Shown here in pieces: positions 3,302 through 57,859 of a stretch of 64,000 bases of DNA (within the stretch, counting starts at the first letter, position 1; every line of letters begins with the position of its first letter). A model generated the notes under the pieces. That model saw nothing but the letters and a program-made list of their open reading frames with translations. It searched no databases and was not told where the DNA came from. Location: NCBI GenBank assembly GCA_026770705.1, contig JANJGN010000042.1, positions 5,084,001 to 5,148,000 on the forward strand. The letters are read 5' to 3'. Source of the DNA: Isurus oxyrinchus (Eukaryota). The translations under genes were made by a program, and so were the position numbers.

Positions 3302-3369
3302 TTTTCCATTATTTCTGAATTTAACCATTGCTCTCTAACAGTAAAGCGAATCGACATTTGCACAACACC

Positions 3370-3403
3370 TGCAGTAGCAAAGATTGACCAGTGGGTGGCG
3401 GTG
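3370..3403 (+). promoter_or_regulatory. CTCF-like site with upstream (U) motif
   Basis: TGCAGTAGC, 6 nt, TGACCAGTGGGTGGCGGTG. Confidence 0.6.
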
Positions 3404-3439
3404 AAACCGTGATTGCTTCCATCACATGAAGCAGGCACT

Positions 3440-4710
3440 GTCTCTGTTCATATTAAATTAGACGCCATTTCTGTTTCTATTACACTAGGATTTGTCTCTG
3501 ATCATATTAGAAAAGGTCATCTCTCAGTTGTTTCTCTAATTGGCTCAGTCGCAGTTGTTTATATACTGGACTAGGGCCACAATACAATTGGCACTAGCTC
3601 AGTCATGACTGCACTGAAGCAGGTCTCGGCTAAAGTTACAATAAGCCATGCCCCAGTTGGCACTGCACTAGAGCTTGTCTCTGGTCATGGAAAACTAGAA
3701 CATGTTTTCATTTGCATTTCACAAGACTCTGTCTCTGCTATTACTCCAGCAGAACGTGCCACGTGTCTATCAAACTGGACCCTGTCTCAGTTAATGCTGC
3801 ACTAATACATGTCTCCATTCATATCACACAATTCCCTGTTTCTGCTGTTATTGTCCTTTATAATGACTTTGTTATTGCTGTACTTGTCCATGTCTCTGTT
3901 TTTATTAATCTCCTACCTTTGCAGGTATTTAATTTACCAGACACTGCGTCAGATTATATTAAAAAGAACCCTGAATTATGTGAAACTCCACTAGACCCTG
4001 TATCAGTTTTCTTAAACTGGATCCAGTCTGTGTTATTGCTACACTAGGCAGGTTCGTATTACACAAGATCCTGTTTCAGTTATTACTGTACTCAGCACTG
4101 CCTCACTTATGTTTCACTAGGTCACGGCCCTGCTTATAACACACTCAATCATGTCTGTACTTATATTCCTCTAGACCGTATTTCAGAACAATTTACACTA
4201 GACTCTCTCTCAGCCTGTATCACACTCGAAATTGTCAGCCTTTTTAACTAAACTGGATCCTGTCTCTGCAGAGGCTTTGTCTTTGTACCTCTGTCTCTGC
4301 TTCTATTCCACTCTCCCTTTCCGTGTTTTTATTCCAGGAGATCATCCCTGTCTCTCTTACACTGGCGGCACTCTCCGTTATTACAACTTAGACTCTATCT
4401 AGGAAGCAATTACTCTATGCCCTGTGCCTGTAATGACTGCCCTATTTCACTTGATGTTGATCCAGGCCCTGTATCAGTAACTACTGCATTAGCCCCGTCT
4501 CCGCTATTACAGCAGTAAACCCTATCTATGTTAATATAGCACTCGTCCCCATCCCTGTTCATTGTGCACTAGGTCACGTCTTTGCTTAAGTAACATTAGA
4601 TGGTCTCTATTGTTACTGCACTAGTAATGTCTCTGCTTAAATTACACTAGGCCCTGTCTCACTAATTACCACACCAGGCTCTGTCCCTGTTGTTACTACA
4701 CTATTCTATG
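3440..4710 (-). repeat. Degenerate 27/54-bp satellite arm (module A, left arm)
   Basis: Recurrent CTAGxCCCTGTCTCAGTTATTACTGCA-like units, the reverse complement of the large 34-44 kb satellite. Confidence 0.8.
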
Positions 4711-5511
4711 TTTCTATAAGGTGAACGTTGAGTTCGAAATGGGCCTCTGACTTTGGCCTAAAACTACAGGTTTCCAACTGACGGTTTGTTCCATGCAGCC
4801 CCTGATATTCAGTTTCATTACAGCCAACAATATTACATATGAGACATCGCCTGTTTTGTGTGTCGGTGTGAAAAGAAATCATGCTGCATTATTCCGCAAA
4901 GATAAAAGATTTATCTTCACCAGAATGTTTCATTTTATTTTATTTTCTCTTTTTCAAACTGTAGCCACAGATCGTCAAATAATGTAAATATTCATTGATA
5001 GTATATCCTGTTGTGTGCTCTTGTTTAGAAATTCATGTCCTACCAACCATTTCTTTGCTAAGACGGGGACATTTGTCACCACATTCACTTAATGTCTGTC
5101 ATCTCTCTACCTGAGACAGCATCTTACTCACGGAAAATTATAGCTCTCTCTCTCTCTTTCTCTTTCTCTCTCTCTCTCCCTCTCTCTGTCTGTCTCGCTG
5201 TCTCTGAGAAATTGACCATTTATTTAAATCTCTGGTTTTCTAATAATGCTTTTTTGAAAAAATAAATTTAATAAAGAATAATTCCCCGACATTAACCTCA
5301 ACGATAAACTACAGCCCATCTCCACCTTCAGCGAATGTGTTAAATCCCAAAGAGTTCCTGCAGTTTAATTGCAGATAGTTTAATACTGCAACTATTTATT
5401 GATAACTATTCAGTTGTTTTCCATTGTTTACAAAGTGATGTCAGACTGACCATTTCGTTTCCAAGAATCGGCTTTTCTGTTCCCAAAGATCATATGGAAA
5501 ATAATTATTTA

Positions 5512-6500
5512 TTATTTCACGGGACGTAAGCATCGTTGGCTCGTCCAACATTTTTATGCCCATCTCTAATTGCCCTTGAGAAGGTGGTGATGAACTGCCT
5601 TCTTGAACCGCTGCAGCCCAAATGGTGTAGCTACACCCACAGTGCTGTTAGGGAGGGAGTTCCAGGATTTTGACCCAGCGACAGTGAGGGAAGGGCGTTA
5701 CATTTCCAAGTAAGGATGGTGAATGACTTGGAGGGGAACTCCCAGGTGGTCGTGTTCCCATCTTTCAACTGCCCTTGCCCTTCTAAATGGGAGTGGTCGT
5801 GTGTTTGGAAAGTGCTGTCGAAGGAGCATTGTTGAGTTTCTGCAGTGCATCTTGTAGATCACACACACTGATGCTACTATGTTCGGTGGTGGAGGGAGTA
5901 AATGTAGAAGGTGGTATGTGAGTTGTCAAAAAGTGGGCTACATTGTGTTGGATGGTGTCGAGCTTGTAGTGTGTTACTGGTACTGCGCTCACCCAAACAA
6001 ATGCAGAGTATTGCATCACACTCTTGACTTGAGCCTTGTAGGTACTGGGCGAGTTTGGGGGTTCAAGAAGTGAATTAATCTCCTCAGTATTCTGAGCCTC
6101 TGATCTGCTCTTGTCGCCACAGTATTTACATTGCTGGTACAGTTCAGTTTCTGCTCAGTGGTAACGCCCACAACGTTGATAGTCGGGGATTCAGTGATAC
6201 TAATTCCTTTTAATATCAAGGGGAAGCAGTTGGATTCTCTCTTGTTGGAAATGGTCACTACTGGGTGTTTGTGTGGCACGAATGCTGCTTGATGCTTATC
6301 AGCCTAAGAGCCCATGTTGTCTAGGTCTTGCTGCATTTGGACATGGTGTGTTTCAGTATATGTGGAGTCATGAATGGTGCTGAACATTGTGTAATCATCA
6401 GCGACCATCCCCACTCCTGACCTTATGATGTGGCAGGGGAGGAGATTAATGAGGCAGATGAAGATGCTTGGGCTTAGGACACTGCCCTGAGGAACTCAGG
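5512..6500 (-). mobile_element. CR1/L2-group LINE 3' fragment
   Basis: Reverse-strand homologue of 13190-14300 (RT C-terminus plus GGGCAATTAG...ATGGG tail), inserted into the core of module A. Confidence 0.85.
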
Positions 6501-6809
6501 GATTAGAATCACATCGAGAATGATGAGCAGCTTATTGGAAAATGTTCACCTCAGCATCTCACTGAAGCCCCTGTGTGATGATCTATGCAAGCAACGGATG
6601 AAATGATCCTGTACATTTACCTGACATGATATCACGCACCTGAAATTATCCGATTTATTATTCCAATTGTTGGAAAGGATTGAAACTCTCGTTGTTCTCG
6701 TTCTATGGTTTTTAACTGTGAGATTTACAAATTCCACCCCGAACGTTCTAATCATTTTTGGACTAGTTTGTCTGTCTCTTTAATTTATATAATCTATGGA
6801 AACTTATCT

Positions 6810-7330
6810 GAAATGACTCAGGGCCTGGCGTAGCATAAAGAGATAAATAACCTGGTGCAATATAAAAGGATATTATGGGCTAGTGCAGCAATAGCAGAGA
6901 CGGGCTCTACTGTAACAGAAACTGAGGTATCAGTTAGTGCAGTCATAATAGAGACATTACTTGTTCAGTATTAACAGAGACATGATCTCGTGTAATATAG
7001 GCAGAGATATGGGCTAGCGAATTAACAATAGAGACAGGATTTGCTGTAATATAGATAGAAATATGGACCAGTACAGTCATAACAGTAACTGGGGCTGGTA
7101 CGTTATAAACATAGATATGGGCTACTTCAGTGATAGGAGAGGCAGGACCTGCTGTAACATAAACAGAGATATGGATTTGTGCAGCGAGGACACTAACTGT
7201 CCCTGGATTTAATATACAAATGAAATATGGGCTAGTTTGGGGAGAAGAGGGACAGGTCCTGATGATACATTCGAAGATGCAAGTCTTTGTATCAGCAAAA
7301 TGGAAATTAAATGCTTTGTATTATAAAACA
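6810..7330 (+). repeat. Degenerate 27/54-bp satellite arm (module A, inverted right arm)
   Basis: CTAGTGCAGCAATAGCAGAGACGGG / GTAATATAGGCAGAGATATGGG units, opposite in orientation to 3440-4710. Confidence 0.75.
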
Positions 7331-7661
7331 TGAAGAGGTCTCATTGAAGCAACTAACAGCAGCAGCGTCAACTTCAGCAATAAAAGATAAAAGTTCCTAT
7401 TGAAAACTGACAGGCCCAAGGTTTCTACTAATAATAACGATAGAAGTTTCCATTAGAAATTGCATGATAGGTGGCCCCTTAATGCAACCCTTGCAATGAT
7501 TACACCTCAAGAAACAGGATGCCAGTGTCTATTGGCTCATGATACCACCTGAAATATACTGGGAGACATTTTCCTCAGTGCTACGGAGCCACCCAGGTCG
7601 TCAAGATGGGAATACTAATTTGAAATGCGGTTTTTCCGGCGTTAGAGCAAGATGGCATATT

Positions 7662-16525: not shown

Positions 16526-16680
16526 AATGCATTTATGATACAAGTACGCTGCAAGTATTCCTGCTGAAGAATTTTAGATAAATGAATTTATTCAATGCAA
16601 AGAGTACCGCATGAATGAATTAAAAGGGTCAAAGCCTCGTCTCAAATCCGTTTCATTGTCTTGTGATTAAAGTAATGCAA

Positions 16681-16714
16681 CGCTACCCTCTGCTGGCAGC
16701 TCACCGCCACTACA
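16681..16714 (-). promoter_or_regulatory. CTCF-like site with U motif
   Basis: Reverse complement TGTAGTGGC, 6 nt, CTGCCAGCAGAGGGTAGCG (core C15>T). Confidence 0.5.
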
Positions 16715-17164
16715 GGCGGTGCTGTTTGCCAGCCTCAGAGAAGTTCCGTTACTGCATGGTTGCATTTTAAAACATATTGACGAATTATATATATGGAACA
16801 ATACTCTGTCGGATTCAAGTTCGCAGCAGGGTTCGCTCTTTTACCACCTGACGCTGTACATGAACTCTCTCATCATTCCCCATTGGAGGTATTGGCTGGA
16901 GCTGGTTGTTGGGAGTTATTTCAGACCGCAATGTGCATATTTGGTGCAGTTATCAGACTCTAATCTCATTCAGAATGGGAGTATTTAAACTTTGCTGTAT
17001 TCTGTAATTCCTCTGCAATACATTGTCAATGTTCAACCCGACACATTGGATCTTGTTAAAGCTTTTTTACTACTTATGTCTCCAAGATAATGTTGTCCAT
17101 TTCTCACATTCTTGGTCCAAGGGGGGAAATTATATATATCAAACGCAAACAATATATGGGAGAG

Positions 17165-18759: not shown

Positions 18760-19145
18760 TTTGAAAGGAGTTTTGTTAAAGTTGTCCTGAATCATGATGG
18801 ACTGGACAGAGTAGGCAGGGAGAAATAGTTCCCAATGTTGGAAGATTCGAGAACAAGTGGGCACAGATTTAAGATAATCAGGAAAAGAAGCAACGGCGAC
18901 ATTTAAAAATGAACTTTTTTTTCGCGCAATGAGTGGTTAGGATTTGGAGTGGACAGGCTGAGAGTATGGTGGAGGCAGATACAATTGATGCTTTCAAAAA
19001 TAAAGTGCATCATTTTCGGAAAAGGGAAAAATGCTGGACTAGGGGGAGAAGTGTGGAACTAGGTCAATTGTTCCTTTAGATGGTTAGCACAGGCAAGACA
19101 AATGGCCTTTTACTTTTCTGTAAGAATTCTTCGATTCTATGATTG
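18760..19145 (+). mobile_element. CR1 LINE 3' end
   Basis: Decayed RT C-terminus ending in a GATTCTATGATT tail. Confidence 0.75.
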
Positions 19146-19186
19146 ATATCAGAAACAGTAAATTAAATCAGCATTTTCACAGCATC

Positions 19187-19220
19187 TGCAATAGCAAGAT
19201 TTGTCCAGCAGATGGAACCG
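19187..19220 (+). promoter_or_regulatory. CTCF-like site with U motif
   Basis: TGCAATAGC, 6 nt, TGTCCAGCAGATGGAACCG (core C15>A). Confidence 0.5.
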
Positions 19221-19249
19221 AAACCATGATTGTTCAAATTGCGTGAGGC

Positions 19250-19700
19250 AGGCATTTCTCAATGGTTGCTGCATTGGCCCTGTCTCCACTCATATCAAAC
19301 TGGACCCCGTGCCTGTTTAAATAACACTAGGTCTTGTCATTGATTATGTTAGAGGAGGTTGTGTCCCACTTATTTCTGTATTCGGCCCAATCTCTGCTGT
19401 CAGCTTACTCAACTAGGCCCTCTTTCTGTTCTGTGAGACACTATCAGTTATTACTGTACGGAACTATGTCTCAGATAACATGACAAAACGTCAGGTCCCA
19501 ATTGTTAATGCCTTGTACAATGTCCCCCTTTGTATTAAACTGGAACATATGTCTGTTTGCATTGCATGAGGCTTTCCCTCAGTTATTACTTGAGTTGATC
19601 CTGCCATGTTTATATTAAGCTAGAGGAGGTCACAATGAATGCTGCACAAGTCCATGTTCTGTTTATATAACACGATGCCCTGTCTCTGTTGTTAGTGCTG
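19250..19700 (-). repeat. Degenerate satellite arm, truncated by a CR1 insertion
   Basis: Colinear with 3430-3850 and 24020-24460, directly after the CTCF-like site. Confidence 0.7.
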
Positions 19701-20350
19701 ACAGGCTGATTAATAAAGCATATGGTATCTGAGGCTTTATATATTGGGGCACAAAGTTCAAAATCAAAGAGATTTTCGAACACAGTTTAAGTCTCAACAT
19801 GAGCATTTGCGTCCAGTTCTGGGCACCACACTTTAAGAAAAGTGTGAACGTATCAGTGAGAGAGTAGGAAAGATTCACGAGAATGGTTCCAGGGATGGAG
19901 ACCTTCAGTTAAACTGGTAGAGCAGATGAATTGGTACTGCTTTCCATAGAGGAGAAAAGGTTGAGGCAGCAGTTATACATGTATTCAAAATCTAGATGGG
20001 TCTGGACAGAGTTGAAAGTAGAAAACGGTCCAATTGGTGGAAGGATCAAGAACCAAGGGGCACAGATTTAAGGTAATTGGGAAAATAAGCGTTAGCGGCA
20101 TGAGGAAATGCTTTTGTTCATGCAGCTAGTGGTTAGGACCTTGAATGGACTGCGTGAGGATGTAGTGGAGGCCGTGACAATCGAGTCATTCAAAATGGAA
20201 TTGGATAATTATATGAAAAGGAGGAAAACATTTGACCTACGGGGAGCAGACAGAGAGTGGCAGGAGATTAATTAATCCTTCGCAAGACAAGAACAGTAAG
20301 AACGAACGGAATGGCCTTTAAGTAGTGATAATACTATGAATATTACATGG
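19700..20350 (+). mobile_element. CR1 LINE 3' fragment
   Basis: CVQFWAPH-like coding remnant and 3' UTR; it truncates the satellite arm. Confidence 0.8.
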
Positions 20351-20959: not shown

Positions 20960-23740
20960 GAGCCTCACCCCAAGCCAATGAAAGAGGTTAATTTTGATTC
21001 TTTCCAAATAAGAGCACATCCACAAATAAAGAAGTACGATTTGATCGCCATTGCAGACATGGCTGCAGGAGGACACGGATTGGGACTTGAATATCAAGGG
21101 GCATTTTGGAAGGACATGAAGGGAAGAAATGGTGGAGGGGTGACTCTGCTAGTTAATGATGGCTTAGCAGAATAGAGAGGGATGACCCAAACTCATGAAA
21201 CCAGGATGTGCAATCACTTTGGAAAGAGGTGAAAAATGGGAAAGTAAAGACAGCGCTTGTTGGAGTCGTGTGCAGGCCTCCTAATAGTAACCACATGGTA
21301 ACACGAAGGAAGAAATAATGGGAGCATGTCGGAAAGGCACGACCGTAATCATGGGAGCTTTCAAACTACGTATGGACTGGAAAAGTCAGATGGGTAAAGG
21401 TAGCCCAGATGTGGAGCTGATCGAATGTTTCCGGGATTGTTTCTTAGTTTTAGAGCCAACTAGAAAGCAGGCTATACCAGACCTGGTATTGTGCAATGAG
21501 ATGGATTTAATTAATGACCTCATGGTGAAGGCAGCCCTCGGTAGTACTGACTATCGTATGATTGAATTTTACATTCTGTTTGAGGGAGAGAGGAGTGGGT
21601 CCGAGACTGTACTTTTAAGACTGAATCAGGGAAATTATGAGGGCATAAAAGCAGAACTGACTAAAGTGAATTGGCAAATTAAGTTAAGGGATAGGTTCAT
21701 TGCGAAGTAATGGTTTTAATTTTAGGGGATATATCAAGATACACAGGATATATACAATCCAGCGAGTACAAATAAGGTCCAGGGGACAACACACCCTCCG
21801 TGGTTACCTAGAAAGGTGAACGAGAGTACCAAACTTAAAGAAAACAAATATATGATTGTGCAATGATAGGTGGAATGCCAGTAGATTGGGCAGAAGAGAA
21901 GGATCAGCTTTAGATGACTATAAGTTTAATAAGGAGGGGAATAAAATAGAATACGACCAAAAGTTAGCCACAAATATAAAAACAGATAGTAAGAGCTTCC
22001 ATGAATATATTTTTGTAAAGAGACTAGTTATTGAAGTGAGCGTTCGCACCAGAGAAAGTGAGTCTGAAGGATTGTTAATGGAAACCATGGGAATGGCAGA
22101 TGAATCGAACAGGTACTTTGCATCAGTAGTTACTACAGAGGAAACAATTAACATTCCAGAGGCAGCTGTAAATCAGGAAATGGAAGGTAGGGAGGAACTC
22201 AGGAAAATTACAATCACCAGAGAAGTGGTACTGAGTAAATAGTTGGAGCTGCGGGCTGACAACTGCCCGGGTCCTGATGGACTTCATCCTGGGGTCTGAA
22301 AAGAAGTGGCTCGTGAGATAGTTGAGGAATTGCTTTAATGTTTTTCCAAGCTCACTAGATTCAGCGGATGTTCCTTTAGTTTGGGATAGAAAACAGAAGG
22401 AGACAGGAAGCTGGAAACTGCAGGCCAGTTAGCTTGACATCTGTTATGGGGAAAAAGTTAGAAGCTACTATGAAAAAAGCTGTAGCAGACAACTTTGACA
22501 AGTTCATGGTAATCAGGGAGAACCAGCATGATTTTGAGGAAGTAACATGGCCTGTGGATAAATGGTAACCGATGGATATACTGCAGTAAGGTTGGCAGAA
22601 GGCATTTGATTATGTGCCACATCAAAGGCGATTACAGAAGCCAAAAGCCCTTGGTATATAGGGAAACTTATTAGTATGGATAGAAGATTGGCTGGCTAAC
22701 AGGAATAAATGGAATTTTCAGGTTGGCAAGGTGTAACGAGTCGTGTGCCAAAGGACTCAGTGCTAGGACCTCAACTCTTTACAATTTATATAAATGAGTT
22801 GCATGAAGGGATGGAAGGGATGGTTGCCAAATTTGCTGATGACACAAAGATAGGTAGGAAATTAATTTGTGAAGAGGACATAAGGAGGCTACAAAAAGAC
22901 ATAGATAAAGAGAGTGGGCAAAGGTCTGGCTAACGGAGTATAATATTGGAAATTTGAAATTGTCCATTTTGGCAGGAAGTATAAAAGAGAAGCATATTAT
23001 CTAAATGGTGAGAGATTGCAGAGCTCTGAGATTCAGTGATCCGGATGTCTTAGTGTGTGAATCATTAAAGGCTAGTATGCAGGTACAGCAAGTAATTAGT
23101 AAATAGAAAGTTATCATTGATTGCAAAAGGAATTGAATTTAAAAATAGGGATGTTATGCTCCGGTTATACAAAGCACTAGTGAGACCACATCTGGAGTAC
23201 TGTGTGCAATTTCGGTCACCTTGTTTAAGGAAGGATGTAAATGCGTTAGAATCAGTTCAGAGAAGGTTTCCCAGATTCATAACTGGAATGGGCGGATTGT
23301 TTTATGAGGAACAATTAGACAGGCTAGGCTGGAGTTTAGGAGAGTAGCAGGCGACTTGGTTGAAACATGTAAGATCCTGGAGGTCCTTGACAGGGTGGAT
23401 GTACAGAGGATGTTTCCTCTTATTGGATAACCTGGAACTAGTGGTCACTATTTAAAAATAAGGGGCTACTCATTTCAACCGTTTCTGGGACGATTTTCCT
23501 TTATCTCTGTGGGTCTTGAGTATTTGGAACTCTCTTCCTGAAAATATTGCTTAATAAATTTTACTTGATCCATAAATACCACTTATTGGGAACTTGTTCG
23601 GTCAGGCACAAATGAATACTCCATTATTATAAATCAAGAATTCGGAACGTAGATATTTTAATTAAAATAGGTTTATATCTCAAAATCTCCTAAGCTTTAC
23701 AGGCCTCTTTCTGTGCTGCAAGCATTCCATGATTCAATGA
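20960..23740 (+). mobile_element. CR1 LINE, degenerate ORF2 (AP endonuclease plus RT)
   Basis: YDLIAI, GRNGGGV, PDLVLCN, STDYRMIEF, VPKDSVLGP, KFADDTK and LVRPHLEYCVQF motifs, with many stops. Confidence 0.92.
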
Positions 23741-23799
23741 TTTATATTTTTATCAATGACCTCACAAGTATTAACTGAAATTGGCATTTAAACGGCATT

Positions 23800-23833
23800 G
23801 ATAATAGCAACGTGTGTCCAGCAGATGGCAGTG
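23800..23833 (+). promoter_or_regulatory. CTCF-like site (near-consensus core)
   Basis: GATAATAGC, 6 nt, TGTCCAGCAGATGGCAGTG. Confidence 0.7.
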
Positions 23834-23855
23834 AAGCCGAGGTACTTTCCATTAA

Positions 23856-24010
23856 CCAAATCAGAATTACCTGGAAAAACTCAGCAGGTCATGAGGACTC
23901 GAAACGTCAACTCTTTTCTTCTCCGCCGATGCTGCCAGACCTGCTGAGTTTTCCCAGGTCATTCTGTTTTTGTTTTGATTTCCAGCATCCGCAGTTTTTT
24001 TTGTTTTTAT
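23856..24010. mobile_element. Penelope-like terminal-repeat insertion with inverted end; hammerhead motif 5'-truncated
   Basis: Near-identical to 28134-28312 and 54136-54347. Flanked by an imperfect TSD, TACTTT(C/A)CATTAA. Confidence 0.75.
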
Positions 24011-24019
24011 TACTTTACA

Positions 24020-33574: not shown

Positions 33575-33875
33575 CACCAGGGTCACTCAGCTCCTGATCC
33601 CATTACAGCCTTGGTCTAAACATGGACAAATGAGCTAAAATCTAAAGTTGAGGTGAAAGTAACAGCCTTTGATATGAAGGCAGCATCTGTCAGAGTGTGG
33701 CATCAAGGAGCAAAACTGGAGTCAATGGGAATCAGGGGGGAATCTCTCTGTTGGTCAGTGTCATCTGTAACACAGACGAAGCTGGTTGTGGTTGTTGGAG
33801 AATTAATCATCTCAGTTCCAGAACATCACTGCAGTTGTTAATTAGGTTAATGCCATAGGTCCAACCATCTTTAGC
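33575..33875 (+). mobile_element. CR1/L2-group LINE RT fragment
   Basis: Colinear with 12945-13220. Confidence 0.75.
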
Positions 33876-33989
33876 AGAGTCTGCAGATGGCGCATTGGGC
33901 CTAACAGCCAAATCAGAACATATCGAAGTGGCATGGCAGCATGTCATCCTCGATCCTGAGGGAATGCCTAAGAAGAAGGAGACAGTCTC

Positions 33990-39900: not shown

Positions 39901-42900
39901 ATTGATTAATATCAACAGCGACAGGGTCTGTTACAGTGAATACTGTTACAATGTACGGATTGAAATAAACTTAAAGAGGGTCTTATACAGTGACTAATGA
40001 TATAATGTCTGCATTAATATAAATGGAGATAGGGTCTCTTTTAGTGGTGACTGATACAAGGTATGGATTAATATCAACTGAGGCAGGATCCATTACAGTA
40101 ATTACTAATATGGGGCCTAGATTAATATAAAATGAGGGAAGGCCTATTTCAATGATTACTGTTACAATGTATGGATTACTATAGACGTACAAAGGGTCTA
40201 TTTCAGTGATTACTATACATGGCCTGTATTAGTATATACTGAGGCAGGGTCTCTTTCAGTGATTACTGATACAAGGCTTGGGTTGGTTAATATAATATGA
40301 GACAGAATCTATTACAGTGTTTACTGATACAAGGTCTGGGCTGGTATAAATTGAAACAGGGTGTATTACTGCGACTACTAATACAGGGTCTGAATTGATA
40401 TAATATGATACTGGGTGTAGTACAGTAATTTCTGATGCAGGGCCTAGGTTAATATACACTGAGACAGGGTCCATTACATTGAACATTGATACAAGGTCTG
40501 TGTTAATATAAGGAGAGGCAGAATCTCTTTCAGTGATTGTTGATACAATGTATGGATTAATATCAAGTGAGCCAATGTCTCTTTTAGTGGTTACTGATGC
40601 AACATATGGATAATATCAACTGATGCAGGGTCTATTACAGTGGTTACTGATACAGGGTCTAGATTAATATAAACTGAGACAGGTTCTGTTACAGTGTTAG
40701 TGATATAAGGTCTGGACTGGTGCAAACTGAGACAGCATGTTTTACAGCAACTACTGACACAGGGTCTGTATTGATATAATCTGAAACTCAGTACAGGACA
40801 ATGATCACTGATACAGTTCCGGATTAATATAAACTGAGACTGGGTCTAGTACAATAATTACTGATATAGGTCCTGGATTGATATAAACTGAGGCAGTGAC
40901 TAGTACAGTAATTGTTAATACATGGTATGGATTAAGATAAACTGAAAAAGGGTCAATTAATGTGGTTACCGACATAAAGCCTGCATTAATATAAACTGAG
41001 AATGGGTTAAATACATTAAGTAATGATACAGGGCCTAGATTAATATAAACTGAGACAGGCTTGATTACAGTGATTACTGATAAATGGTCTCAATTAATTT
41101 AAACTTATGCAGAGTCTATTACAAAGATTACTGATACAGGGTCCAGGTTAATAAAAACTGAGACAAGGCCTATTGAGGTGATTACCAGTACAATATCTGC
41201 ATTAATATAAACAGCGACAGTGTCTATTCAATTGAATACTGATACAAGGCACGGATTAAAATAAATGGAGCCAGTGTGTATTACTGTGAATACTGATACA
41301 GGTTATGGGTTAATATAAACTGAGACAGGCTCCATTACAGCATTCACCAATACAATATCAGTGAATATATAAACTGAGAAAGGGTATTTTACAGTGATTA
41401 TTGATTCAAGGCATGGATTAATATAAACTGTGACTGGGTGTATTACAGTGATTGCTGATACATGGTATTGATTAACATAAACTGAGACAGGGTCTATTCC
41501 AGTGATTAACAAGACAAGGTCTATATGATAGAAACTGTGTCAGGGTTTTTACAGGGATTACTGATACAAGTTATTGATTACTATCAACTGAGGCAGGGTC
41601 TCTTATGGTGATTACTAATACAAGGTTTGTATTAATAAAAACTGAGACAGGGTCTCTTTCAGTGCTTACTGATACAAGACATGGATTAATATAAACTGAG
41701 ACACTGTGAATTACAGTGAATACAGAAACAGGTTATGGGTTATTATAAACGGAGACAGTGTGTATTACAGTGAATACTGAAACAGGTTATGGGTTATTAT
41801 AAACTGAGACAGTGTGTATTACAGTGAATACTGAAACAGGTTATGGGTTATTATAAACTGAGACAGTTGCGTATTACAGTGAATACTGAAACAGGTTAGG
41901 GGTTAATATAAACTGAGACAGTCTGTATTACAGTGAATACTGAAACAGGTTATGGGTTATTATAAACTGAGACAGTGTGTATTACAGTGAATACTGAAAC
42001 AGGTTATGGGTTATTATAAACTGAGACAGTGCGTATTACAGTGAATACTGAATCAGGTTATTGGTTATCATAAACTGAGACAATGTGTATTAGAGTGAAT
42101 ACTGAAACAGGTTATGGGTTATTATAAACTGAGACAGTGTGTATTACAGTGAATACTGAAACAGGTTATGGGTTATTATAAACTGAGACAGTGAGTATTA
42201 CAGTGAATACTGAATCAGGTTATGGGTTATTATAAACTGAGACAGTGTGTATTACAGTGAATGCTGAAACAGGTTATGGGTTATTATAACCTGAGACAGT
42301 GTGTATTACAGTGAATACTGATACAGGTTATGGGTTATTATAAACTGAGACAGTGTGTATTACAGTGAATACTGAAACAGGTTATGGGTTATTATAAACT
42401 GAGACAGTGTGTATTACAGTGAATACTGAAACAGGTTATGGGTTATTATAAACGGAGACAGTGTGTATTACAGTGAATACTGAAACAGGTTATGGGTTAT
42501 TATAAACTGAGACAGTGTGTATTACAGTGAATACTAATACAGGTTATGGGTTATTATAAACTGAGGCAGTGTGTATTACAGTGAATACTGAAACAGGTTA
42601 TGAGTTAATATAAACTGAGACAGTGTGTATTACAGTGAATACTGAAACAGGTTATGGGTTATTATAAACTGAGACAGTGTGTATTACAGTGAATACTGAA
42701 ACAGGTTATGGGTTATTATAAACTGAGACAGTGTGTATTACAGCGAATACTGAAACAGGTTATGGGTTATCATAAACTGAGACAATGTGTATTACAGTGA
42801 ATACTGAAACAGGTTATGGGTTATTATAAACTGAGACAGTGTGTATTACAGTGAATACTGAAACAGGTTATGGGTTATTATAAACGGAGACAGTGAGTGT

Positions 42901-44120
42901 TACAGTGAATACTGAATCAGGTTATGGGTTATTATAAACTGAGACAGTGTGTATTACAGTGAATACTGAAACAGGTTATGGGTTATTATAAACTGAGACA
43001 GTGTGTATTACAGTGAATACTGATACAGGTTATGAGTTATTATAAACTGAGACAGTGTGTATTACAGTGAATACTGAAACAGGTTATGAGTTAATATAAA
43101 CTGAGACAGTGTGTATTACAGTGAATACTGAAACAGGTTATGGGTTATTATAAACTGAGACAGTGTGTATTACAGTGAATACTGAAACAGGTTATGGGTT
43201 GTTATAAACTGAGACAGTTTGTATTACAGTGAATACTGAAACAGGTTATTATAAACTGAGACAGTGTGTATTACAATGAATACTGAAACAGGTTATGGGT
43301 TATTATAAACTGAGACAGTCTGTATTACAGTGAATACTGAAACAGGTTATGGGTTAATATAAACTGAGACAGTGTGTATTACAGTGAATACTGAAACAGG
43401 TTATGTGTTATTATAAACTGAGGCAGCCTCTATTACAGAAATTACTAATACAATATTTGTATTTATATAAACCGAGAAAGGTTATTTTGCAGTGATTATT
43501 GATGCAAGGCATGGATTAATATAAACTGAGACTGGGTCTATTACAGAGATGACTGATACATGCTATTGATTAACATAAACTGAGACAGGGTCTATTACAG
43601 TGATTACCAATACAAGGTTTATATTGATATAAAGTGTGTCATGGTTTTTACAGGGATTACTGATACAAGGTATTGATTACTATCAACTGAGACAGGGTCT
43701 TTTGCCGTGATTGTTTGCATTATATAAACTAAGACAGGGTCTCTTTCAGTGGTTACTGATACAAGGTATGGATAATATCCACTTAGGCAGGGTTTATTAC
43801 AGTGATTACTGATACAAAGTCTGTATTCATATAAACAGCGGCAGGGTCTAGTGTAGTGATTACTGGTAAACGGCCTAGATTAATATCAACTGCTACAGAA
43901 CAGGATTACTGATACTGAGCCCAATTTAATAAAACTGAAGCGGGGCATAAAGCGATAATCTCTGACACAGCACGGAGTGTAAGTCAACCAGGGATAAATC
44001 TGGTGTGGAAACAATTGATGCAGGGCTTTGTGGCATATTGAGAAGGACAGAGAGTAATGCAGTTATAATTAATGCATAACCTAGTGTAATATACAGAGAG
44101 ATAGGGTTTAGTGTGACATC
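33990..44120 (+). repeat. ~10 kb 54-bp tandem satellite (GATTAATATAAACTGAGACAGGGTCTA+TTACAGTGATTACTGATACAAGGTATG), a dimer of two related 27-mers
   Basis: Continuous 54-bp periodicity. The two halves share ACTGA.ACA.GGT.T at the same offsets. Confidence 0.97.
41690..43410 (+). repeat. Homogeneous sub-array, ~32 near-identical copies of TTATTATAAACTGAGACAGTGTGTATTACAGTGAATACTGAAACAGGTTATGGG
   Basis: Directly visible near-perfect 54-bp tandem repeat. Confidence 0.97.
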
Positions 44121-47329: not shown

Positions 47330-49930
47330 GTTCCCTTTATATTACACCAGATCCTGCCTCAATTATTACTCTTTGAGTTCAAGTCACAGTTCTGGTTTTG
47401 CTGAAACCTGTGAAATTTATGGATGCATAATCTGGTATTTGTATTTTTATTACACTAGGCTCTGACACAATTAACTCTGTGCTAATCAAGCCTCTGTTTC
47501 AGGCCGGCCCCCAAATCTGTTATTACTACATTAGAGCATTTCGCTATATATATTATATAATGCTCTGTTTCAGTTATTAGTGAACCATACACCATGTCTC
47601 TATATGTCGCACTCGACCACGTCTCAGTTATTACTATACTAGAACATGTATGTGTTAATATAACCCTGGATCCTGTCTCTGTTGTTACTGCACTGGAACT
47701 TGTCTACATTTATGTTTTACATAATTGTTTCTGTTAAAATTGCACTGGAAAATATATCTCTTTATATTTTACAGTGGGCCCTTTCTCAGTTATTACTGCC
47801 CTATACCATGTTTCTGTTAAGCTAACACTTTACCCACGCCAGTAAACATTGAATTATATCATGGCAAACGTATTGGAAACTGGTGAGGAAATAGTGAAGT
47901 TAACGCGCAGCACAAAACAATGGAAACAGAAACAATTTTTTTTTATTGAATTTCATTGAGAGTGGAAAGTGTTACATTCCATTCCAAGTGAGAGAGTTAC
48001 AGATTTATTATGCTCACGTTAGGTATAGGTACAGTTGCATTTTCACCGCCTCTTGCACAGATCATCACACACTCCAGTGACGCACAAGTGATCACTTGTT
48101 AACAAACAGAGAAAATGGTGGGTAGATGTCCTTTATTCTCCATGTGATTTAATCCACTTTCGAACTGAATTCTGAGCGCAGCTAAACTCACTTTGGAATC
48201 TAAATAGGCATTTTCCACACAAGAACTCGAAAAAGACGTCAGCATCAAGAAACGTTAACGATAATAGATGATCTGAAATTGCTGGATGGATGGTTCGAAA
48301 TATAGATAGATAGACTGACAGCCAAACAGACAGGTACGCAGCTAGATGGGTTGACAGATAGAGAGACTGAGATACACAACATCTAGCGTAATATATACAG
48401 TTTAATGCTAAATAACTTTTTCGGTGGCTCATATGATACAAACAGGGAGATGGTCTTGTATAATGTGAAGAGATGTATGCATCAGTGCAATTACTTACTC
48501 CAACAGGGCCTAGTGTAAAACACCAACTGAGACTAGGTCTTTTGCACTGCGATCTGAGACAGAGTCCTGTGTAATTTAAAGGAAGGCATAACCCAGTCAT
48601 TAAGTATCAGCACCTTTCATGGTCTTAAATACCTCGATCAAAGCCCCTCTTAACACCTTCTATTCTAAGGAAAACGATTCAAGATCTCCAAGGTCCAGTA
48701 ACATTCGGATCAATCTCCTCTTCATCCTCTCTGCGACATTCAAATGCTTTATAAAACAGAGTTCCTGGAATAATTATGTACAATACCCATGGAAACACAA
48801 TAGGGAGTACTTTAACAAATGTTGTTTTTAATCATTCACTGGGCTGAAGTATTTATTTCTCTCTATTCATCCAGGAGATGTGAGCGTCTCTGACACGGCC
48901 AGCATTTCCCCCATGCTCCGCTGTCCTGGAACTGAATATCTGGCTAGACATTTTCAGAGTCGGAGGATAGTTAAGAGTGAACCACGTGCTGTGGGCCTGG
49001 AGTCACATTTAGGCCAGACTGGGGAAGGATGCATATTTACTTCACCGAATGTTCATTAGTGAACCAGATGCGTTTATAGCAATGAAAATTGTAACGATCC
49101 AGTTCCATTTCCATTTTTTAATTCATTCATGGGATTTGTGCGTTTCCAGCTGAACCAACATTCAATAGCCAAACACAATTGCCCTTGAGAAGGTGTTAGT
49201 GAGCAAACCTCTTGTACTGCTGCAGTCCACGTGCTGTAGGGACACCCACAGTGCTTCTAGGAAGGGAGTTGTATGATTTGGACCCAAGGATAGTGAAGAA
49301 ACAGGGACTTTCCATTGTTGTTCCTGTGCTACTGCTGCCCTTGTTGCCCGGAGAATTGGGGAATATTCCACCACACTCCTGACATGTGCCTTGTAGTTTG
49401 TGGACAGGTATTTGCAGAATTCCCAGCTTCCGAACGGCTCTTGTCTCAATCGCATTTAAATTTCGCCAGTTGCTGTGGTGGGATTTGAATCCATGTCCCC
49501 AGAAGATGAGTCTGGACCTCTGGGCTAGTGATGAGCACTTGGGACGCTATAACATTCAAGGCTATGGGCCAAGTGCTGGTAAATAGGATTAGGTAGGTAG
49601 GTCAGGTGTTTCTCACTTGCTGGTGCAGACTCGATGGGCCGAAGGGCCTTTTCTGCACTGTGATTCTGTGAATCTGTGGCAGCGCCACGGCAATGTTGTG
49701 CCTGAGTTAGAGTCCAGTGTAATGTAACCAGAGACAGGGCCTGGTATAATATAAATGGAAAGCTGCTCCAGTACAATAATAACTGAAACAGAGCCTGGTT
49801 AAAATAAACTTCAACATGGTCCAGTACATTAAAAACAGGGACAAGTTCTATGAAATATAAGCATAAACAACATAGCGCATCAATAACTAAGAAACCGCCT
49901 TATGTAACACAAACAGATATTATATGAGGT
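47330..49930. repeat. Reverse-oriented satellite module C: arms 47330-47830, 48470-48600 and 49690-49930; core ~47830-48460; interrupted by SINE/LINE fragments at 48600-49680
   Basis: 48088-48200 aligns to the reverse complement of 26120-26210. Satellite units face opposite ways on the two sides of the core. Confidence 0.7.
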
Positions 49931-54347: not shown

Positions 54348-55967
54348 CAAAGAAAATAACCTCTTTTATGCAGCATTGTGTTACCTCAGCTTCCTTTGTT
54401 CAAAAGTAAACAAACCTAACCTATCCTCCCAAATAGCAATCCTCCTGCAGTCGAGGCAATGTCGTCATAAATCTCCGCTGTAACGTTTCTAGCCCAATCA
54501 AATCTTTCATATTGTTCCTGGCCCAGGGCTGCACCGAACACTCTAACTCGGGCCTAACTATTGTTTTACACAGTTCCAGCAGGACGTCTCAACTCGTATA
54601 TTCTATGCCTCGGAGAATAAAGGCAAGAATCCCATCTGTTTCTTGATCAATTTATCTACTTGTCAAGGCACCTTTACGAATATCTGCATTCGATAGTCCC
54701 ACTTTACTTCTCAGTGTCGTATCATTCGTGAATCAGTGGCAGTCACTATCTCAGAATGCACTGGATGCCGGGGTGCTGAATAAATTTAAGGAGGAGAAAG
54801 ACAGATTTTTAATTAGTAATCGGTTGAAAGGTTACAGGGAGAGGATAGGAAATTGGAGTTGAGGCCGAAATGAGATCAGCCATGATCGTAATGAATAGCG
54901 GGGCAGGCTCGGTGGGCGGAATTGCCAACTCTTGCTCCTAGTTCTTATGTTTTATTTACTGTTTATTACTCTATCTTGTTAGCTTTCCTTAAATGCACTA
55001 CCTCGCAAACATCTCTAAGCCATTCTTATGTCTACCTGACTGGTCGATTTCCTGCAGTATACAGCTTTTTGCTCAATTCTTAATCACACAGCTAATTTGT
55101 GTATCATCTAAAGCCTTCTTAATCATGCTCTTTTCAGTCATGTGCAAGTAATTGATATATGCAAGAAAAGGTAAGTGTCCTATTACTAAGGCCTGGGGGA
55201 TACCACTCCCGTTTACCGAAACACCCCGTGTCATTTACCGTTTGCTTCCTGGCAATGAACCAATTTTGGATTTACCTCGCCGCTTTGCCCTGGATCACAT
55301 TGGCTTTTAATTTCAGAACCGCTCTGCCATGTAGAACCTGGTCATTTTAAAATCCATATACACTACATCGAATGCATTGTATCCATCGGCACTCCTTATT
55401 ATATCTTCAAAACATTTATGCATAATAGTCAGACTCGCCCTTCGTTTAACAAATTCTTGCTGTCCAGCTTTGCTTACTCAGTGTCATTCTAAATGTCTCA
55501 TAGAATGTTCTCTTTCCAATACTATTCCCTGCTCCAAGATTATATTCAGTGTCCTGTAATTACTCAGTCTTATACCTTTCTGCGTTTTGAACAAGGGTAC
55601 AACGTTAGCTGTCCTGTCGCCCTGTCTCAGTGCCTGAAGTTGCAAAGGATTATAAAGTAGTGGTGATTCCTATGCCGTGGGTACAGTTCGGGCGAGCCTT
55701 GGCATTTATGCATTTTAAAAGGTATTAAACCGCTTGATACTTTCAAAATGGTGGCAATTCGCCATTTCTAAAGGGGAATTGGGAGTCGGTAGACATGTTT
55801 GACTTAACAACTATTCCAAATCAGTCGATAATAAATAAGTAAAACATTAGAGACTGTCTAATGTAATATAAACCATCCATGCCCATCCCTACATTACACT
55901 AGGCCCTTTTTCAGTTATTGCCGCCTGAGGCAGTGCTGGTTTGGTATGATTTAGGCAAACCAACTTA

Positions 55968-56001
55968 CACTGTCATCTGGTGGCCAATCGTTGCCATTAC
56001 T
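55968..56001 (-). promoter_or_regulatory. CTCF-like site with U motif
   Basis: Reverse complement AGTAATGGC, 6 nt, TGGCCACCAGATGACAGTG. Confidence 0.55.
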
Positions 56002-56639
56002 GCTATCGTGAAAATGTCGACGTTCGTACTGTTGTTGATAGAAACGTATCAACAAACAAATTTGCACTTATATTCCACTCAACGCATTTTTAATGAAAGG
56101 GAATTAAATGCTGTAAGAATAACTGGTGAAGCAAATCCACCTTTGTGGAAGTAACTTGAAAACATTAGGAATAATGTGTCTTGTATGCACACACTCACAG
56201 ACACAAATAGACGCAGATACATATGTTGAGTCTCAGTCACACAACCAGTAACCACGGAAAACGTGAATGTAAAGGCCCTCAGGAGAAACATTCCTTAACA
56301 TTAAAACACGGTGTACAATAGACACAACAGAGATTTCCACTAATCTTTATGAACTGCAATGCGTTCTGGCTCACCTATCCTTCAGTCCCTCAATCCAGTT
56401 CAAATTTTCGAGATTGTCATAAGATTCGACCAGTACTTTCAACAAAACTGTGACATAACACCGAGCAATGGGAAATTGTACACAGCTCCTGATGGCTGTG
56501 ACCAAGACTAAACGTATTTTACAACAAACAAAAATCCATCTTCCCACCGAGTCAAATATATGTTCTTTAATTATTATGAGACATACTTCTCCCTTCATCC
56601 ATCTGTCCATTTACCTATCACAGAAAAAAATGCTGTACC

Positions 56640-57550
56640 ACAATAACTGACATTGGCAATAGATTAATATAAACAAAGTGTCCAGTGCTGTCATTACAGG
56701 AAAGAGGCCTTATTTAACATAAACAGCGATAAGGACTCCTGCACTCTGAGCAGTTTAGTCCATGAATAACTATCGCAGACCCCGTCGAATATAAACAGGG
56801 AGATGACCTCATGCAATTTAAAGGTGGGCATAAAATAGTGCAGAAATAAAGGAGAAAGGGTCTAGTGTAATATAAATAAGGACATGGATGAGTACAATAT
56901 AACCAGACACATGCGTCAGTGCAGCAATAACTGAAAATGTGCCTAGTGTAAAGGATGGATGCGCACAGAGTTTATTGCACCAATGTCCGTGACTGGACCC
57001 AGTAGAATATGGACGGAGACATGGTCAGGTTATGGCCTTGCAAACCCCTTCAGTAACTTGAACACTTCTTTCAAAACATCTCTTAACTCTCTCTGCTCTA
57101 GGATGCTATTTCTATCGTTTTTCCACAGAACGGAAGCCCCGCACCCCATTTTGATAAATCCTTCGACAGCATCTTCAGAACCCGAGAGCTCTGCGACATA
57201 GAAGGACAAGGACAGCAGGTGAATGGAAGCACCAACAACTGCTAGTGCCGCTCCAAGTCACACACAATATTCTGATTTGGAAATATAGATTTTTTTCCTT
57301 CGTTGGTATTGAGTCAAAACCCCAGAGCTCCCTTCCCACCAGCACTATTTTTGGATTTGAAACACACACAAGGCGGCTCACCAACACATTTTCCAGGGCA
57401 ATTAGGTTTGGTTAGTAAATGTCGGCCTTGACAGAAATGTCAAAATCTGAGAACGAAGTAGAACAAGCAATAACTGAGTGAAGGTGTGCTGTGATATAAA
57501 CATAGACATGCTTTGGAGCAGTAATAATTGAGGCAGTATATGTATGTTTT
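56640..57550 (+). repeat. Degenerate satellite arm of reverse-oriented module D (LINE fragments inserted at ~57030-57450)
   Basis: CTAGTGTAATATAAATAAGGACATGG / CAGTGCAGCAATAACTGA units abutting the CTCF-like site at 57571. Confidence 0.65.
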
Positions 57551-57570
57551 CATGGAAGCAATCGCGCTAG

Positions 57571-57604
57571 CACTGCCACCCGGTGGCGAAAGATTGCCAT
57601 TGCT
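57571..57604 (-). promoter_or_regulatory. CTCF-like site with U motif
   Basis: Reverse complement AGCAATGGC, 6 nt, TCGCCACCGGGTGGCAGTG. Confidence 0.6.
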
Positions 57605-57859
57605 GTTACTGTAAAATGCCTTCATCAGTTATTGTCTCTTATATTAACGCACCAAAACCAAGCTACAATGATATACAAGATCATTACATTCTACAGGGGG
57701 TGGCAAAGGATAACAATGCAAAGGATTCCACCTGAGTGAAGCTTTGTTGCGCAAAGAAACATTAGCAAAAGGACAAAGTGGTTCAAATCCTGTTAATTTA
57801 TATTAATGTACATTTATTGGCGTTAATTGAAGGGAGGACTTTTGATCAGGGAACATTTA

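What the first reader, a model, noticed from the sequence alone, without database searches (positions are those of the whole stretch)
3340..57620. Repeated module of CTCF-like site, satellite arm, unique core and inverted satellite arm: a foldback-like insulator cassette
Seen in the sequence: five paralogous cassettes share GCATTT.CAC-like flanks, a U-like 9-mer, an invariant 6-nt spacer and a CTCF-like 19-mer (3370, 19187, 23800 on +; 55968, 57571 on -). Four of them lead into the same 27/54-bp satellite; at 55968 only a short remnant follows. Modules A (3340-7330) and B (23780-27110) are colinear through a ~1 kb non-repetitive core (4797 CAGCCCCTGATATTCAGTTTCATTA vs 25575 CAGCGCCTGATATTCAGTTTCATTA; 6527 CAGCTTATTGG..CAGCATCTCAC vs 26186) and end in an inverted satellite arm. 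Module C (47330-49930) carries the same core in reverse. Established knowledge: foldback elements have long inverted arms built from tandem subrepeats, and CTCF ZF9-11 bind a TGCAGT-type motif 5-6 bp upstream of the core. Inference: this is either an undescribed foldback-type element that spreads CTCF sites or a segmentally duplicated boundary unit of shark Ig/tRNA regions.
Basis: partly seen in the sequence, partly recalled or inferred. Interest (0 to 1): 0.8.

Follow-up and report, generated by a model that had tools for sequence, protein, structure and literature searches.

The report
Old repeat unit carrying CTCF-type sites
Beside a shark antibody gene lie six worn copies of an old non-coding repeat whose first 110 bases hold a good, apparently selectively kept match to the binding site of the genome-folding protein CTCF; it is not a foldback jumping gene, and whether CTCF binds is untested.

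Summary
Five head cassettes sit where stated, and I found a probable sixth at 16.7 kb. Modules A and B are colinear over about 3.1 kb at 61-72% identity. C is a partial reversed copy. All arms carry the 27-bp repeat that also builds the 10-kb satellite.

It is not a foldback transposon. Head and tail are unrelated, so there are no terminal inverted ends. No convincing target duplication exists, and nothing is coding.

In raw reads, module B has the same depth as its non-module flanks. That depth is far above single copy, so module and flanks ride together in a larger block present in tens of copies, also in a sister species.

New here: substitutions in the CTCF core fall mostly on positions the published consensus tolerates (7 of 11, 16% expected). 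The true register ranks first of 149 control windows. This points to past CTCF-type constraint, yet every copy except B has one hit at an invariant position.

All heads start at one point, in four kinds of upstream context. How the unit multiplied stays open. Binding is untested.

This scan has noted the same module on other pieces of this genome beside IgH clusters (s1-300798, s1-300803, s1-871945, s1-871949).

The assembly gap touches no module.

The parts
3320..3450 (+). Module A head. U-like 9-mer at 3370-3378; CTCF-like core at 3388-3402, with one mismatch at a fixed position (A6 to G).
3450..4715 (+). Module A arm 1: degenerate 27-bp minisatellite, in the opposite orientation to the big satellite.
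   Evidence: in-register match to B arm 1 at 66%
4729..6800 (+). Module A unique core (4729-5499 and 6500-6800), split by an inserted LINE 3' fragment at 5500-6499.
6800..7455 (+). Module A arm 2 (6800-7230, minisatellite inverted relative to arm 1) and unique tail (7230 to about 7455).
16664..16754 (-). Probable sixth head, solitary and more decayed. CTCF-like core at 16682-16696, one mismatch (C12 to T). No arm follows it.
   Evidence: leave-one-out profile E 0.12, best non-member hit
18782..19142 (+). 3' end of a CR1-like LINE that abuts the start of head D.
19143..19745 (+). Module D: head (19143-19250; core 19205-19219, mismatch C12 to A) plus arm 1 only. Another LINE 3' part follows it.
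23107..23742 (+). 3' part of a LINE ending in an (ATTCAATG)n-type tail at 23724-23742, directly before head B. A weak reverse-transcriptase trace lies at 22709-22933.
23748..23853 (+). Module B head. CTCF-like core at 23818-23832 is a perfect match to the consensus.
23854..24021 (+). Young palindromic high-copy insertion that separates B's head from its arm. It is not part of the module.
   Evidence: depth about 35000
24025..26866 (+). Module B body: arm 1 24025-25484, core 25512-26500, arm 2 26500-26700, tail to about 26846-26866.
31117..31269 (.). Assembly gap. It lies in no module. The left border of the satellite block is therefore unknown.
31400..43958 (+). Satellite of 54-bp units (dimers of the 27-bp arm repeat), at 31400-32120 and 33979-43958, interrupted by 32121-33978. 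A 377-bp higher-order repeat at 96% identity lies at 39066-40274.
47336..49930 (-). Module C, reversed and partial: arm 2 47336-47860, distal core 47882-48400, other repeats, arm 1 49702-49930. No recognisable head. A LINE tail at 51090-50727 lies on the head side.
55836..56052 (-). Module E: head 55927-56052 (core 55969-55983, mismatch G11 to A) and a short arm stub 55836-55931.
56084..57655 (-). Module F: head 57530-57655 (core 57572-57586, mismatch A6 to G), a SINE-like insertion at about 57160-57470, arm 1 56646-57100, and a core piece 56084-56345 that abuts the start of head E.
57901..58412 (+). Headless core fragment in + orientation.

Best explanation
What it is. This is an old, non-coding repeat unit of about 3.1 kb with defined, unlike ends. 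In order it holds a unique head of about 110 bases with a CTCF-type site, a 27-bp minisatellite, a unique core of about 1 kb, the same minisatellite inverted, and a unique tail of about 200 bases.

History.
- The unit was multiplied at least six or seven times inside this locus long ago; copies are now 55-72% alike.
- It was then broken up by LINE, SINE and small palindromic insertions and by deletions.
- An arm-type array expanded into the 10-kb 54-bp satellite.
- Much later the copies were carried along when a larger block, which by earlier notes includes the IgH cluster, was amplified to tens of copies.

Class. It is not a foldback transposon. I take the first multiplication to have been local and at the DNA level, because six copies lie within 55 kb. 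The common start point of all heads leaves a mobile-element origin open.

The head. It is a genuine CTCF-type motif that stayed compatible with CTCF binding while the copies diverged. The most likely activity is therefore CTCF binding and loop anchoring. This would be strongest at B and weakened at the others, which each carry one hit at an invariant position.

Status of each step.
- Shown: structure, homology, periodicity, motif statistics, depth.
- Inferred: order of events, copy number, binding.
For: Structure and homology.
- A and B are colinear at E-values down to 3e-88.
- The arms match in register at 66%, against 56-60% out of register. The arrays were therefore already degenerate when copied.
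- Every arm shows 27-base periodicity and no core does.
- The satellite profile hits the arms in opposite orientations on the two sides of the core.
- Nested LINE and young-element insertions interrupt A and B at points where the other copy is continuous.

Motif.
- Six consensus matches, against 0.62 expected.
- In the 14 core columns of five heads, 11 cells differ from the consensus. Seven go to the letter that CCASYAGRKGGCRS tolerates, against 15.6% expected (p 4e-4).
- The true register is rank 1 of 149 control windows: 4 non-tolerated cells against 9 for the next best (15-mer version).
- Adding the sixth head keeps rank 1.
- Pairwise identity peaks over the core, 0.72 against 0.55-0.62 beside it.

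Larger block.
- With about 1.9 Gb of reads, depth is a flat 11-29 across module B. It is also flat across the non-module stretches 26925-27121 and 27516-27900.
- Many sites are read as another letter in all reads, and some of those reads differ at 4-15 other places.
- Shark assemblies listed in PMC11979771 are 2.9 Gb or larger, so single-copy depth would be below 1.
- The sister species gives the same picture.

Cartilaginous fishes.
- Skate domain borders carry MA0139.1-type motifs with an orientation bias (PMC10115646).
Against: - All heads begin at the same point although their upstream neighbours differ: a tRNA-Ser pseudogene, two LINE tails only 49% alike, and unrelated sequence. A and B also end together. 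Shared ends with unrelated flanks are what a mobile element gives.
- A 9-base direct repeat flanks A, with about 2% chance expectation.
- Pairwise distances are star-like.
- The copy-number reading assumes that reads were sampled at random and that the genome is of ordinary shark size. I had no known single-copy stretch as a yardstick.
- The substitution test rests on five or six related sequences and on a consensus, not a weight matrix.
- The upstream motif is only a 6-of-10 match to the published CAGCTGTTCC-like consensus (PMC12885311).
- No binding, accessibility or contact data were seen.
Confidence: 0.5

Rival explanations
1. The unit is a dead non-autonomous mobile element of unknown class, foldback-like, Helitron-like or other. 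It inserted repeatedly and so seeded CTCF-type sites.
For: - A common 5' start in five heads with four kinds of upstream context.
- A common 3' end in A and B with unrelated downstream DNA.
- Both orientations and star-like distances.
- Internal tandem repeats and no coding capacity.
- A 9-base direct repeat around A.
Against: - No inverted similarity between head and tail.
- No repeat around B beyond chance.
- In A, homology with B seems to run through the right-hand copy of the 9-mer.
- Six copies within 55 kb would need an implausibly abundant family or local hopping.
- There is no excess depth over the flanks at 80% likeness.
- Three copies are head-only fragments.
Confidence: 0.25
2. The unit spread as RNA through LINE machinery. 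This could be 3' transduction by the LINE that sits upstream. It could instead be retrocopies in which the enzyme jumped from the 5' end of the unit's RNA to the 3' end of a LINE RNA, which would explain LINE tails abutting the head start.
For: - Intact LINE 3' tails end exactly at the head start in D (19142) and within 15 bases in B (23742).
- A LINE tail lies on the head side of C.
- The LINE parts differ in length and are only 49% alike between B and D, against 66% for the heads.
- The ends are asymmetric.
Against: - The tail has no LINE-like or A-rich 3' end.
- Fragments are truncated at the 3' side (D, E, F), the opposite of what LINE-made copies show.
- The copies are clustered locally.
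- A, E and F show no LINE tail upstream.
- LINE insertion by microhomology at the same spot is an equally good reading.
Confidence: 0.12
3. The heads are a purpose-kept boundary system. Each IgH block would keep oriented CTCF anchors: three forward sites left of the satellite, and two reverse sites 4.2-5.8 kb upstream of the V exon. These would insulate the antibody mini-locus from the satellite and from neighbouring blocks.
For: - The substitution pattern is motif-specific.
- Orientation is + for A, D and B and - for E and F, with the V exon at 61757-62077 (+).
- Earlier notes report the same geometry on another piece.
- The mouse IgH locus has a class of CTCF sites within 8 kb upstream of VH leaders (PMC6746451).
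Against:
- The probable sixth head at 16.7 kb (-) breaks the tidy pattern.
- Overall head identity (0.55-0.71) is no higher than that of core segment c2 (0.72).
- The sites face away from the V gene.
- There are no binding data.
Confidence: 0.15
4. The CTCF likeness has no meaning today. The heads would be neutrally decaying DNA, and the motif an ancestral accident or a site for another factor, for example an E-box protein at CAGATG.
For: - Every copy but B has lost an invariant position.
- The copies are as diverged as the arms and cores.
- At 80% likeness, two further organisms' runs from the same study as X5 gave only 29 reads, all on flanking repeats, and none at all.
Against: - The true register is rank 1 of 149 on two measures, with a wide margin.
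- A 14-mer consensus match in a 3-kb unit is itself improbable.
Confidence: 0.3

Closest known systems
Foldback (FB) transposons of Drosophila and similar elements
   Same: Two long arms built from tandem subrepeats lie in inverted orientation around a unique middle. The unit is non-coding.
   Different: - The arms are internal. The outer ends are a unique head and a unique tail with no inverted similarity.
- No reliable target duplication.
- No sign of dispersed young copies.
- The arms of one module are no more alike than arms of different modules.
Repeat-borne CTCF site expansions, for example SINE B2 in rodents (background in PMC10982698)
   Same: A CTCF-type motif sits at a fixed place inside a repeated unit, so it is multiplied together with the unit.
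   Different: - The carrier is a 3-kb composite with minisatellites, not a SINE.
- Copies number a handful per block, not tens of thousands.
- No binding has been shown.
- Spread seems tied to duplication of a locus.
CTCF-binding elements of the mouse and human IgH V region (PMC6746451)
   Same: - The sites lie a few kb upstream of a VH exon, like the paper's class found within 8 kb upstream of the VH leader.
- They share the half-site CCAGCAG with the mouse VH sub-consensus GACCAGCAGGGGGC.
- The site in B has no CpG.
   Different: - There are no RSS-associated sites here.
- The shark sites are part of an old repeat and are antisense to the V gene.
- Sharing the half-site has about a 1 in 4 chance.
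- Descent from a common ancestral element is not implied.
CTCF sites beside or inside tandem repeats (own knowledge: DM1 CTG repeat flanks; DXZ4 and FIRRE macrosatellites)
   Same: A CTCF-type site is placed directly at the edge of a tandem array.
   Different: Only one site sits at one edge of each array. The repeat units themselves carry no CTCF motif.
Satellites born from internal repeats of dispersed elements
   Same: The 10-kb 54-bp satellite belongs to the same family as the 27-bp arms and is more homogeneous, as expected for a later expansion.
   Different: The direction of descent, arm to satellite or satellite to arm, is inferred from homogeneity alone.

Membership tests
Foldback transposon | Inverted repeats reach both termini of the element. 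| tested here: not met
   Local alignment of head against reverse-complemented tail is no better than shuffles (p 0.04-0.94 over six pairs, none consistent). The inverted arms are internal.
Foldback transposon | Arms are built of tandem subrepeats. | tested here: met
   Lag-27 autocorrelation is 0.35-0.47 against a mean of 0.27 in all arms. Arm orientations are opposite.
Foldback transposon | A target-site duplication flanks each copy. | tested here: inconclusive
   A has a 9-mer at 3303 and 7447 (chance about 2%). B has only an 8-mer, misplaced inside the head (chance about 10%).
Any transposable element family | Copies are dispersed through the genome, independent of the neighbouring DNA. 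| tested here: inconclusive
   Depth over module B equals that of its flanks at 80% likeness. Copies only 60-70% alike could not be counted. No whole-genome search was available.
Any transposable element family | Common termini with unrelated flanks. | tested here: met
   Head profile column 1-2 falls at 3329, 19143, 23757, 56043 and 57646, with different upstream DNA. A and B end together.
CTCF binding site (sequence level) | Match to the core consensus CCASYAGRKGGCRS (quoted in PMC6746451). | tested here: met
   B matches perfectly. A, D, E, F and the 16.7-kb copy have one mismatch each. Six hits against 0.62 expected.
CTCF binding site (sequence level) | Upstream motif for zinc fingers 9-11 at 2-7 bases from the core region (PMC12885311). 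| tested here: inconclusive
   The spacer length is fixed. The 10-mer matches the published CAGCTGTTCC-like consensus at about 6 of 10 positions. Four positions of the 9-mer are invariant in six copies.
CTCF binding site (function) | Occupancy by CTCF in cells. | not testable with these tools
CTCF-binding data for cloudy catshark are reported to exist (PMC7471279).
Segmental (block) duplication | The unit and its unrelated flanks are multiplied together. | tested here: met
   Depth is a flat 11-29 over module B and over 26925-27121 and 27516-27900, with about 1.9 Gb of reads. Many sites differ from the window in all reads. This concerns the recent amplification, not the old one.
LINE 3' transduction or chimeric retrocopy | A LINE 3' end lies directly upstream, with LINE 5' truncation of variable length. 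| tested here: inconclusive
   Met in B and D and partly in C. Not met in A, E and F. No LINE-type 3' end on the tail.

The most novel reading that the evidence does not exclude
The heads are working, oriented CTCF anchors that were kept under selection and co-amplified with every IgH block. Each shark antibody mini-locus would then get its own loop boundary against the neighbouring satellite and the next block. That would be an independent, repeat-borne counterpart of the CTCF architecture that governs V(D)J recombination in mammals.
Probability: 0.15. Interest if true: 0.7.

Novelty: new member of a known kind. Interest (0 to 1): 0.38.

Why it matters
Sharks keep their antibody heavy-chain genes as many small separate clusters. 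How each cluster is kept independent during recombination and expression is an open question.

A family of oriented CTCF-type sites that travels with each cluster-bearing block, and shows a substitution pattern expected under CTCF constraint, gives a concrete candidate that can be tested directly. CTCF-binding data for a catshark are reported to exist (PMC7471279).

If the sites prove unbound, the locus is still a clear case of how an old composite repeat seeds a satellite and is then carried along by gene-cluster amplification.

Tried and rejected
- Head derived from a tRNA-type SINE. Only A has a tRNA-Ser-like sequence upstream. That sequence, with the LINE tail before it, is a separate duplicated unit (200-470 against 3050-3302).
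- Head as a recombination signal. By eye there is no heptamer and nonamer in proper spacing.
- Extra heads behind other LINE tails (29940-30060, 20310-20480, 50729-50600). MAFFT suggested likeness, but profile searches found nothing.
- LINE tail remnants upstream of A, E and F. Not better than shuffles.
- One large palindrome centred on the satellite. The inverted matches between the left and right halves are not mirror-colinear.
- Tandem array of units. No head is preceded by a tail.
- Coding or RNA function of the core. No Pfam match for its ORFs or those of neighbours beyond LINE reverse transcriptase. No Rfam match in 23600-27000 apart from weak hairpin hits on the young insertion.
- Head, core or tail pieces at the borders of the big satellite. 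None found.
- Literature. No paper found that describes this repeat or CTCF sites at shark IgH clusters.
- Dfam and Repbase could not be consulted.

Full report
**Setting.** The window is shark DNA.
- It holds an antibody heavy-chain V exon at 61757-62077 (+).
- It holds two low-scoring tRNA-like genes at 2.1 and 3.2 kb.
- It holds LINE fragments with reverse-transcriptase traces.
- It holds a 10-kb satellite of 54-bp units.
- It has one assembly gap at 31117-31269.

**The gap.** I tested it first, as asked.
- Its left side ends in GA-rich low-complexity sequence. Its right side is unique for about 130 bases before the satellite begins.
- No repeat or alignment links the two sides.
- No module touches the gap. 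The only thing it hides is what lies at the left border of the satellite.
- I did not try to fill it.

- Self-comparison and segment-by-segment profile searches show that A (about 3320-7455) and B (about 23748-26866) are colinear over head, arm 1, core, arm 2 and tail at 61-72% identity. E-values go down to 3e-88.
- A's core is interrupted at 5500-6499 by a LINE 3' fragment, exactly where B is continuous (26156/26160).
- B's head is separated from its arm by a young 168-bp palindromic element (23854-24021).
- C (47336-49930) is a reversed, partial copy with both arms and the distal ~500 bases of core, but no recognisable head.
- D is head plus arm 1. E is head plus a stub.
- F is head, arm 1 and a core piece (56084-56345) that runs straight into the start of E's head.
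- A further headless core lies at 57901-58412 (+).
- Every arm shows 27-base periodicity and no core does. The large satellite is dominated by a 54-base period and belongs to the same family. Arm 1 and arm 2 hit its profile on opposite strands.
- The arms of A, B and D match best in one register (64-67%, against 56-60% elsewhere). The arrays were therefore already degenerate when the unit was copied.

**The heads.**
- A profile of the five heads finds only those five at significance.
- The published core consensus CCASYAGRKGGCRS (quoted in PMC6746451) with at most one mismatch hits six times, against 0.62 expected.
- The sixth hit, at 16683-16696 (-), lies in a stretch that aligns with the heads on both sides of the core. 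It is the best non-member hit of a leave-one-out profile (E 0.12). I take it as a probable sixth, solitary, more decayed head.
- B matches the consensus perfectly. A and F have A6 to G, D has C12 to A, E has G11 to A, and the sixth has C12 to T.
- The spacer between the upstream 9-mer and the core region never varies in length.
- The 9-mer itself is only a partial match to the published upstream consensus, about 6 of 10 against CAGCTGTTCC (PMC12885311).

**Is the motif more than a passenger?** The 15 core columns have the highest pairwise identity in the head, but only slightly (0.72 against 0.55-0.62 beside it, and 0.71 for another block). The kind of change is more telling.
- In the 14 consensus columns of the five heads, 11 cells differ from the family consensus.
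- Seven of them are the very letter that the degenerate consensus allows.
- Given the transition share seen in the rest of the head, 15.6% would be expected (binomial p 4e-4). The 15-mer version gives 8 of 12.
- As a control that keeps relatedness and base composition, I slid the same pattern of fixed and two-fold positions along the alignment. Of 149 windows the true register is first on both measures: 4 non-tolerated cells against 9 for the runner-up, and a tolerated share of 0.64 against 0.39.
- Adding the sixth head keeps it first. That copy was partly found through the motif, so it is not independent.
- This is the pattern expected if the sites stayed under CTCF-type constraint after the copies separated.
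- The test rests on few, related sequences and on a consensus, not a weight matrix. Every copy but B has since taken one hit at an invariant position.

**Foldback transposon?** No.
- The inverted arms are internal.
- The unique head and the unique tail show no inverted similarity.
- A is flanked by a 9-base direct repeat (3303 and 7447, chance about 2%). B has nothing comparable, and A-B homology seems to continue through the right-hand copy.
- Nothing is coding.
- No Rfam family matches the module.

**How did it multiply?** Two observations pull in opposite directions.

Pointing to a mobile unit:
- All heads start at the same point (profile column 1-2 at 3329, 19143, 23757, 56043 and 57646) although their upstream neighbours differ.
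- A sits behind a decayed tRNA-Ser-like gene. That gene, with the LINE tail before it, is itself a duplicated unit.
- D and B sit directly behind the 3' end of a CR1-like LINE with an eight-base repeat tail ending at 19142 and 23742.
- E and F sit behind unrelated DNA.
- The LINE parts of B and D are only 49% alike, against 66% for their heads, so they do not look co-duplicated.
- A and B also end together, with unrelated downstream DNA.

Pointing to local DNA-level copying:
- Six or seven copies within 55 kb cannot be explained by ordinary dispersal of a 3-kb element.
- Three copies are head-side fragments.
- Read depth gives no sign of further copies.

I therefore rank local DNA-level multiplication of a defined unit first and a dead mobile element of unknown class second. 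A LINE-mediated route, by transduction or template jumping, which would explain the LINE tails at the head start, comes third.

**The larger block.** I laid raw genomic reads of the source species, a sister species and two other organisms on 22000-27900 at 80% likeness.
- About 1.9 Gb of reads were scanned per species. Shark assemblies listed in PMC11979771 are 2.9 Gb or more, so a single-copy stretch should show depth below 1.
- Depth is 11-29 all along module B. It is the same (14-18) over the non-module DNA at 26925-27121 and 27516-27900.
- The LINE, the SINE and the young palindromic element reach 10^3 to 3.5x10^4.
- At many sites all reads carry another letter than the window, and some such reads differ at 4-15 further places.
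- The sister species gives the same picture. One of the two other organisms gave only 29 reads, all on flanking repeats, and the other gave none.
- I read this as follows. Module B and its flanks belong to one larger block present in tens of copies, some of them close to this one and some up to about 10% diverged.
- This fits earlier notes of this scan, which describe the same five-site architecture. They also report the same pair of reverse sites '4-5.6 kb upstream of the V gene' on other pieces of the genome. Here the reverse sites lie 4.2 and 5.8 kb upstream of the V exon, or 4.0 and 5.6 kb from the cluster start given in note s1-871285.
- I had no single-copy yardstick, so the copy number is an inference.

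**Likely working.**
- If bound, CTCF at A, D and B (forward) and at E and F (reverse) would form convergent pairs around the satellite, leaving the IgH cluster outside.
- The probable sixth head (reverse, 16.7 kb) would pair with A.
- Cartilaginous fishes do use this motif with an orientation rule at domain borders (PMC10115646).
- Binding here is not shown.
- The earlier follow-ups on paralogous pieces called the heads passengers of block duplication. I agree for the recent amplification. I add that the substitution pattern argues the sites were not neutral throughout.

**Verdict.** This is a real, old composite repeat with a CTCF-type head. It is not a foldback element. The copies examined were carried along with a larger amplified block, which by earlier notes includes an antibody-gene cluster. 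Function is plausible and testable but unproven. Interest is moderate.

Noticed in passing
window 23854-24021, 28132-28326, 44634-44736, 54126-54354: A small palindromic element, flagged by another note as carrying a hammerhead-type ribozyme. It reaches depth of about 35000 in 1.9 Gb of reads in both species, so it is extremely abundant. Many reads join opposite strands inside it.
   Followed up: partly
window 27314-27493: A SINE-like repeat with depth of about 23000. Hundreds of reads show a 'goes back 47-56' joint at 27317-27372 with 7-9 extra letters, so most genomic copies carry a short internal tandem duplication that this copy lacks.
   Followed up: no
window 3219-3302 and about 395-470: A tRNA-Ser(TGA)-like sequence scoring only 39 bits, with a mispaired T stem by eye; it is probably a pseudogene. 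Together with the LINE tail before it, it forms a unit that occurs twice (200-470 against 3050-3302).
   Followed up: partly
window 2063-2137 (-) with 1795-1836 (-): A tRNA-Glu-like sequence (39 bits) is followed about 230 bases later, on the same strand, by a CR1-type tail. This is the layout of a tRNA-derived SINE, not of a tRNA gene.
   Followed up: no
window 50084-50449: A 365-base tract of almost pure C broken by single A's, on the head side of module C where its head should be.
   Followed up: no
window 39066-40274: A 377-bp higher-order repeat at 96% identity lies inside the otherwise 74%-alike satellite, a sign of recent local amplification.
   Followed up: no
window 7663-8402: A 740-base (GT)n tract about 200 bases after the end of module A. 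A similar GT-rich stretch lies just outside the start of F's head (57705-57996).
   Followed up: no
window 23818-23831 and the other head cores: The family consensus shares the half-site CCAGCAG with the sub-consensus reported for mouse VH-region CTCF sites (PMC6746451). The chance of this is about 1 in 4, so it is a curiosity only.
   Followed up: partly
window 32121-33978: A block of about 1.9 kb interrupts the satellite and holds a LINE-like piece (33568-33875, alike to 12947-13222 and 52454-52748). The two satellite parts have the same orientation, so they were probably one array.
   Followed up: no
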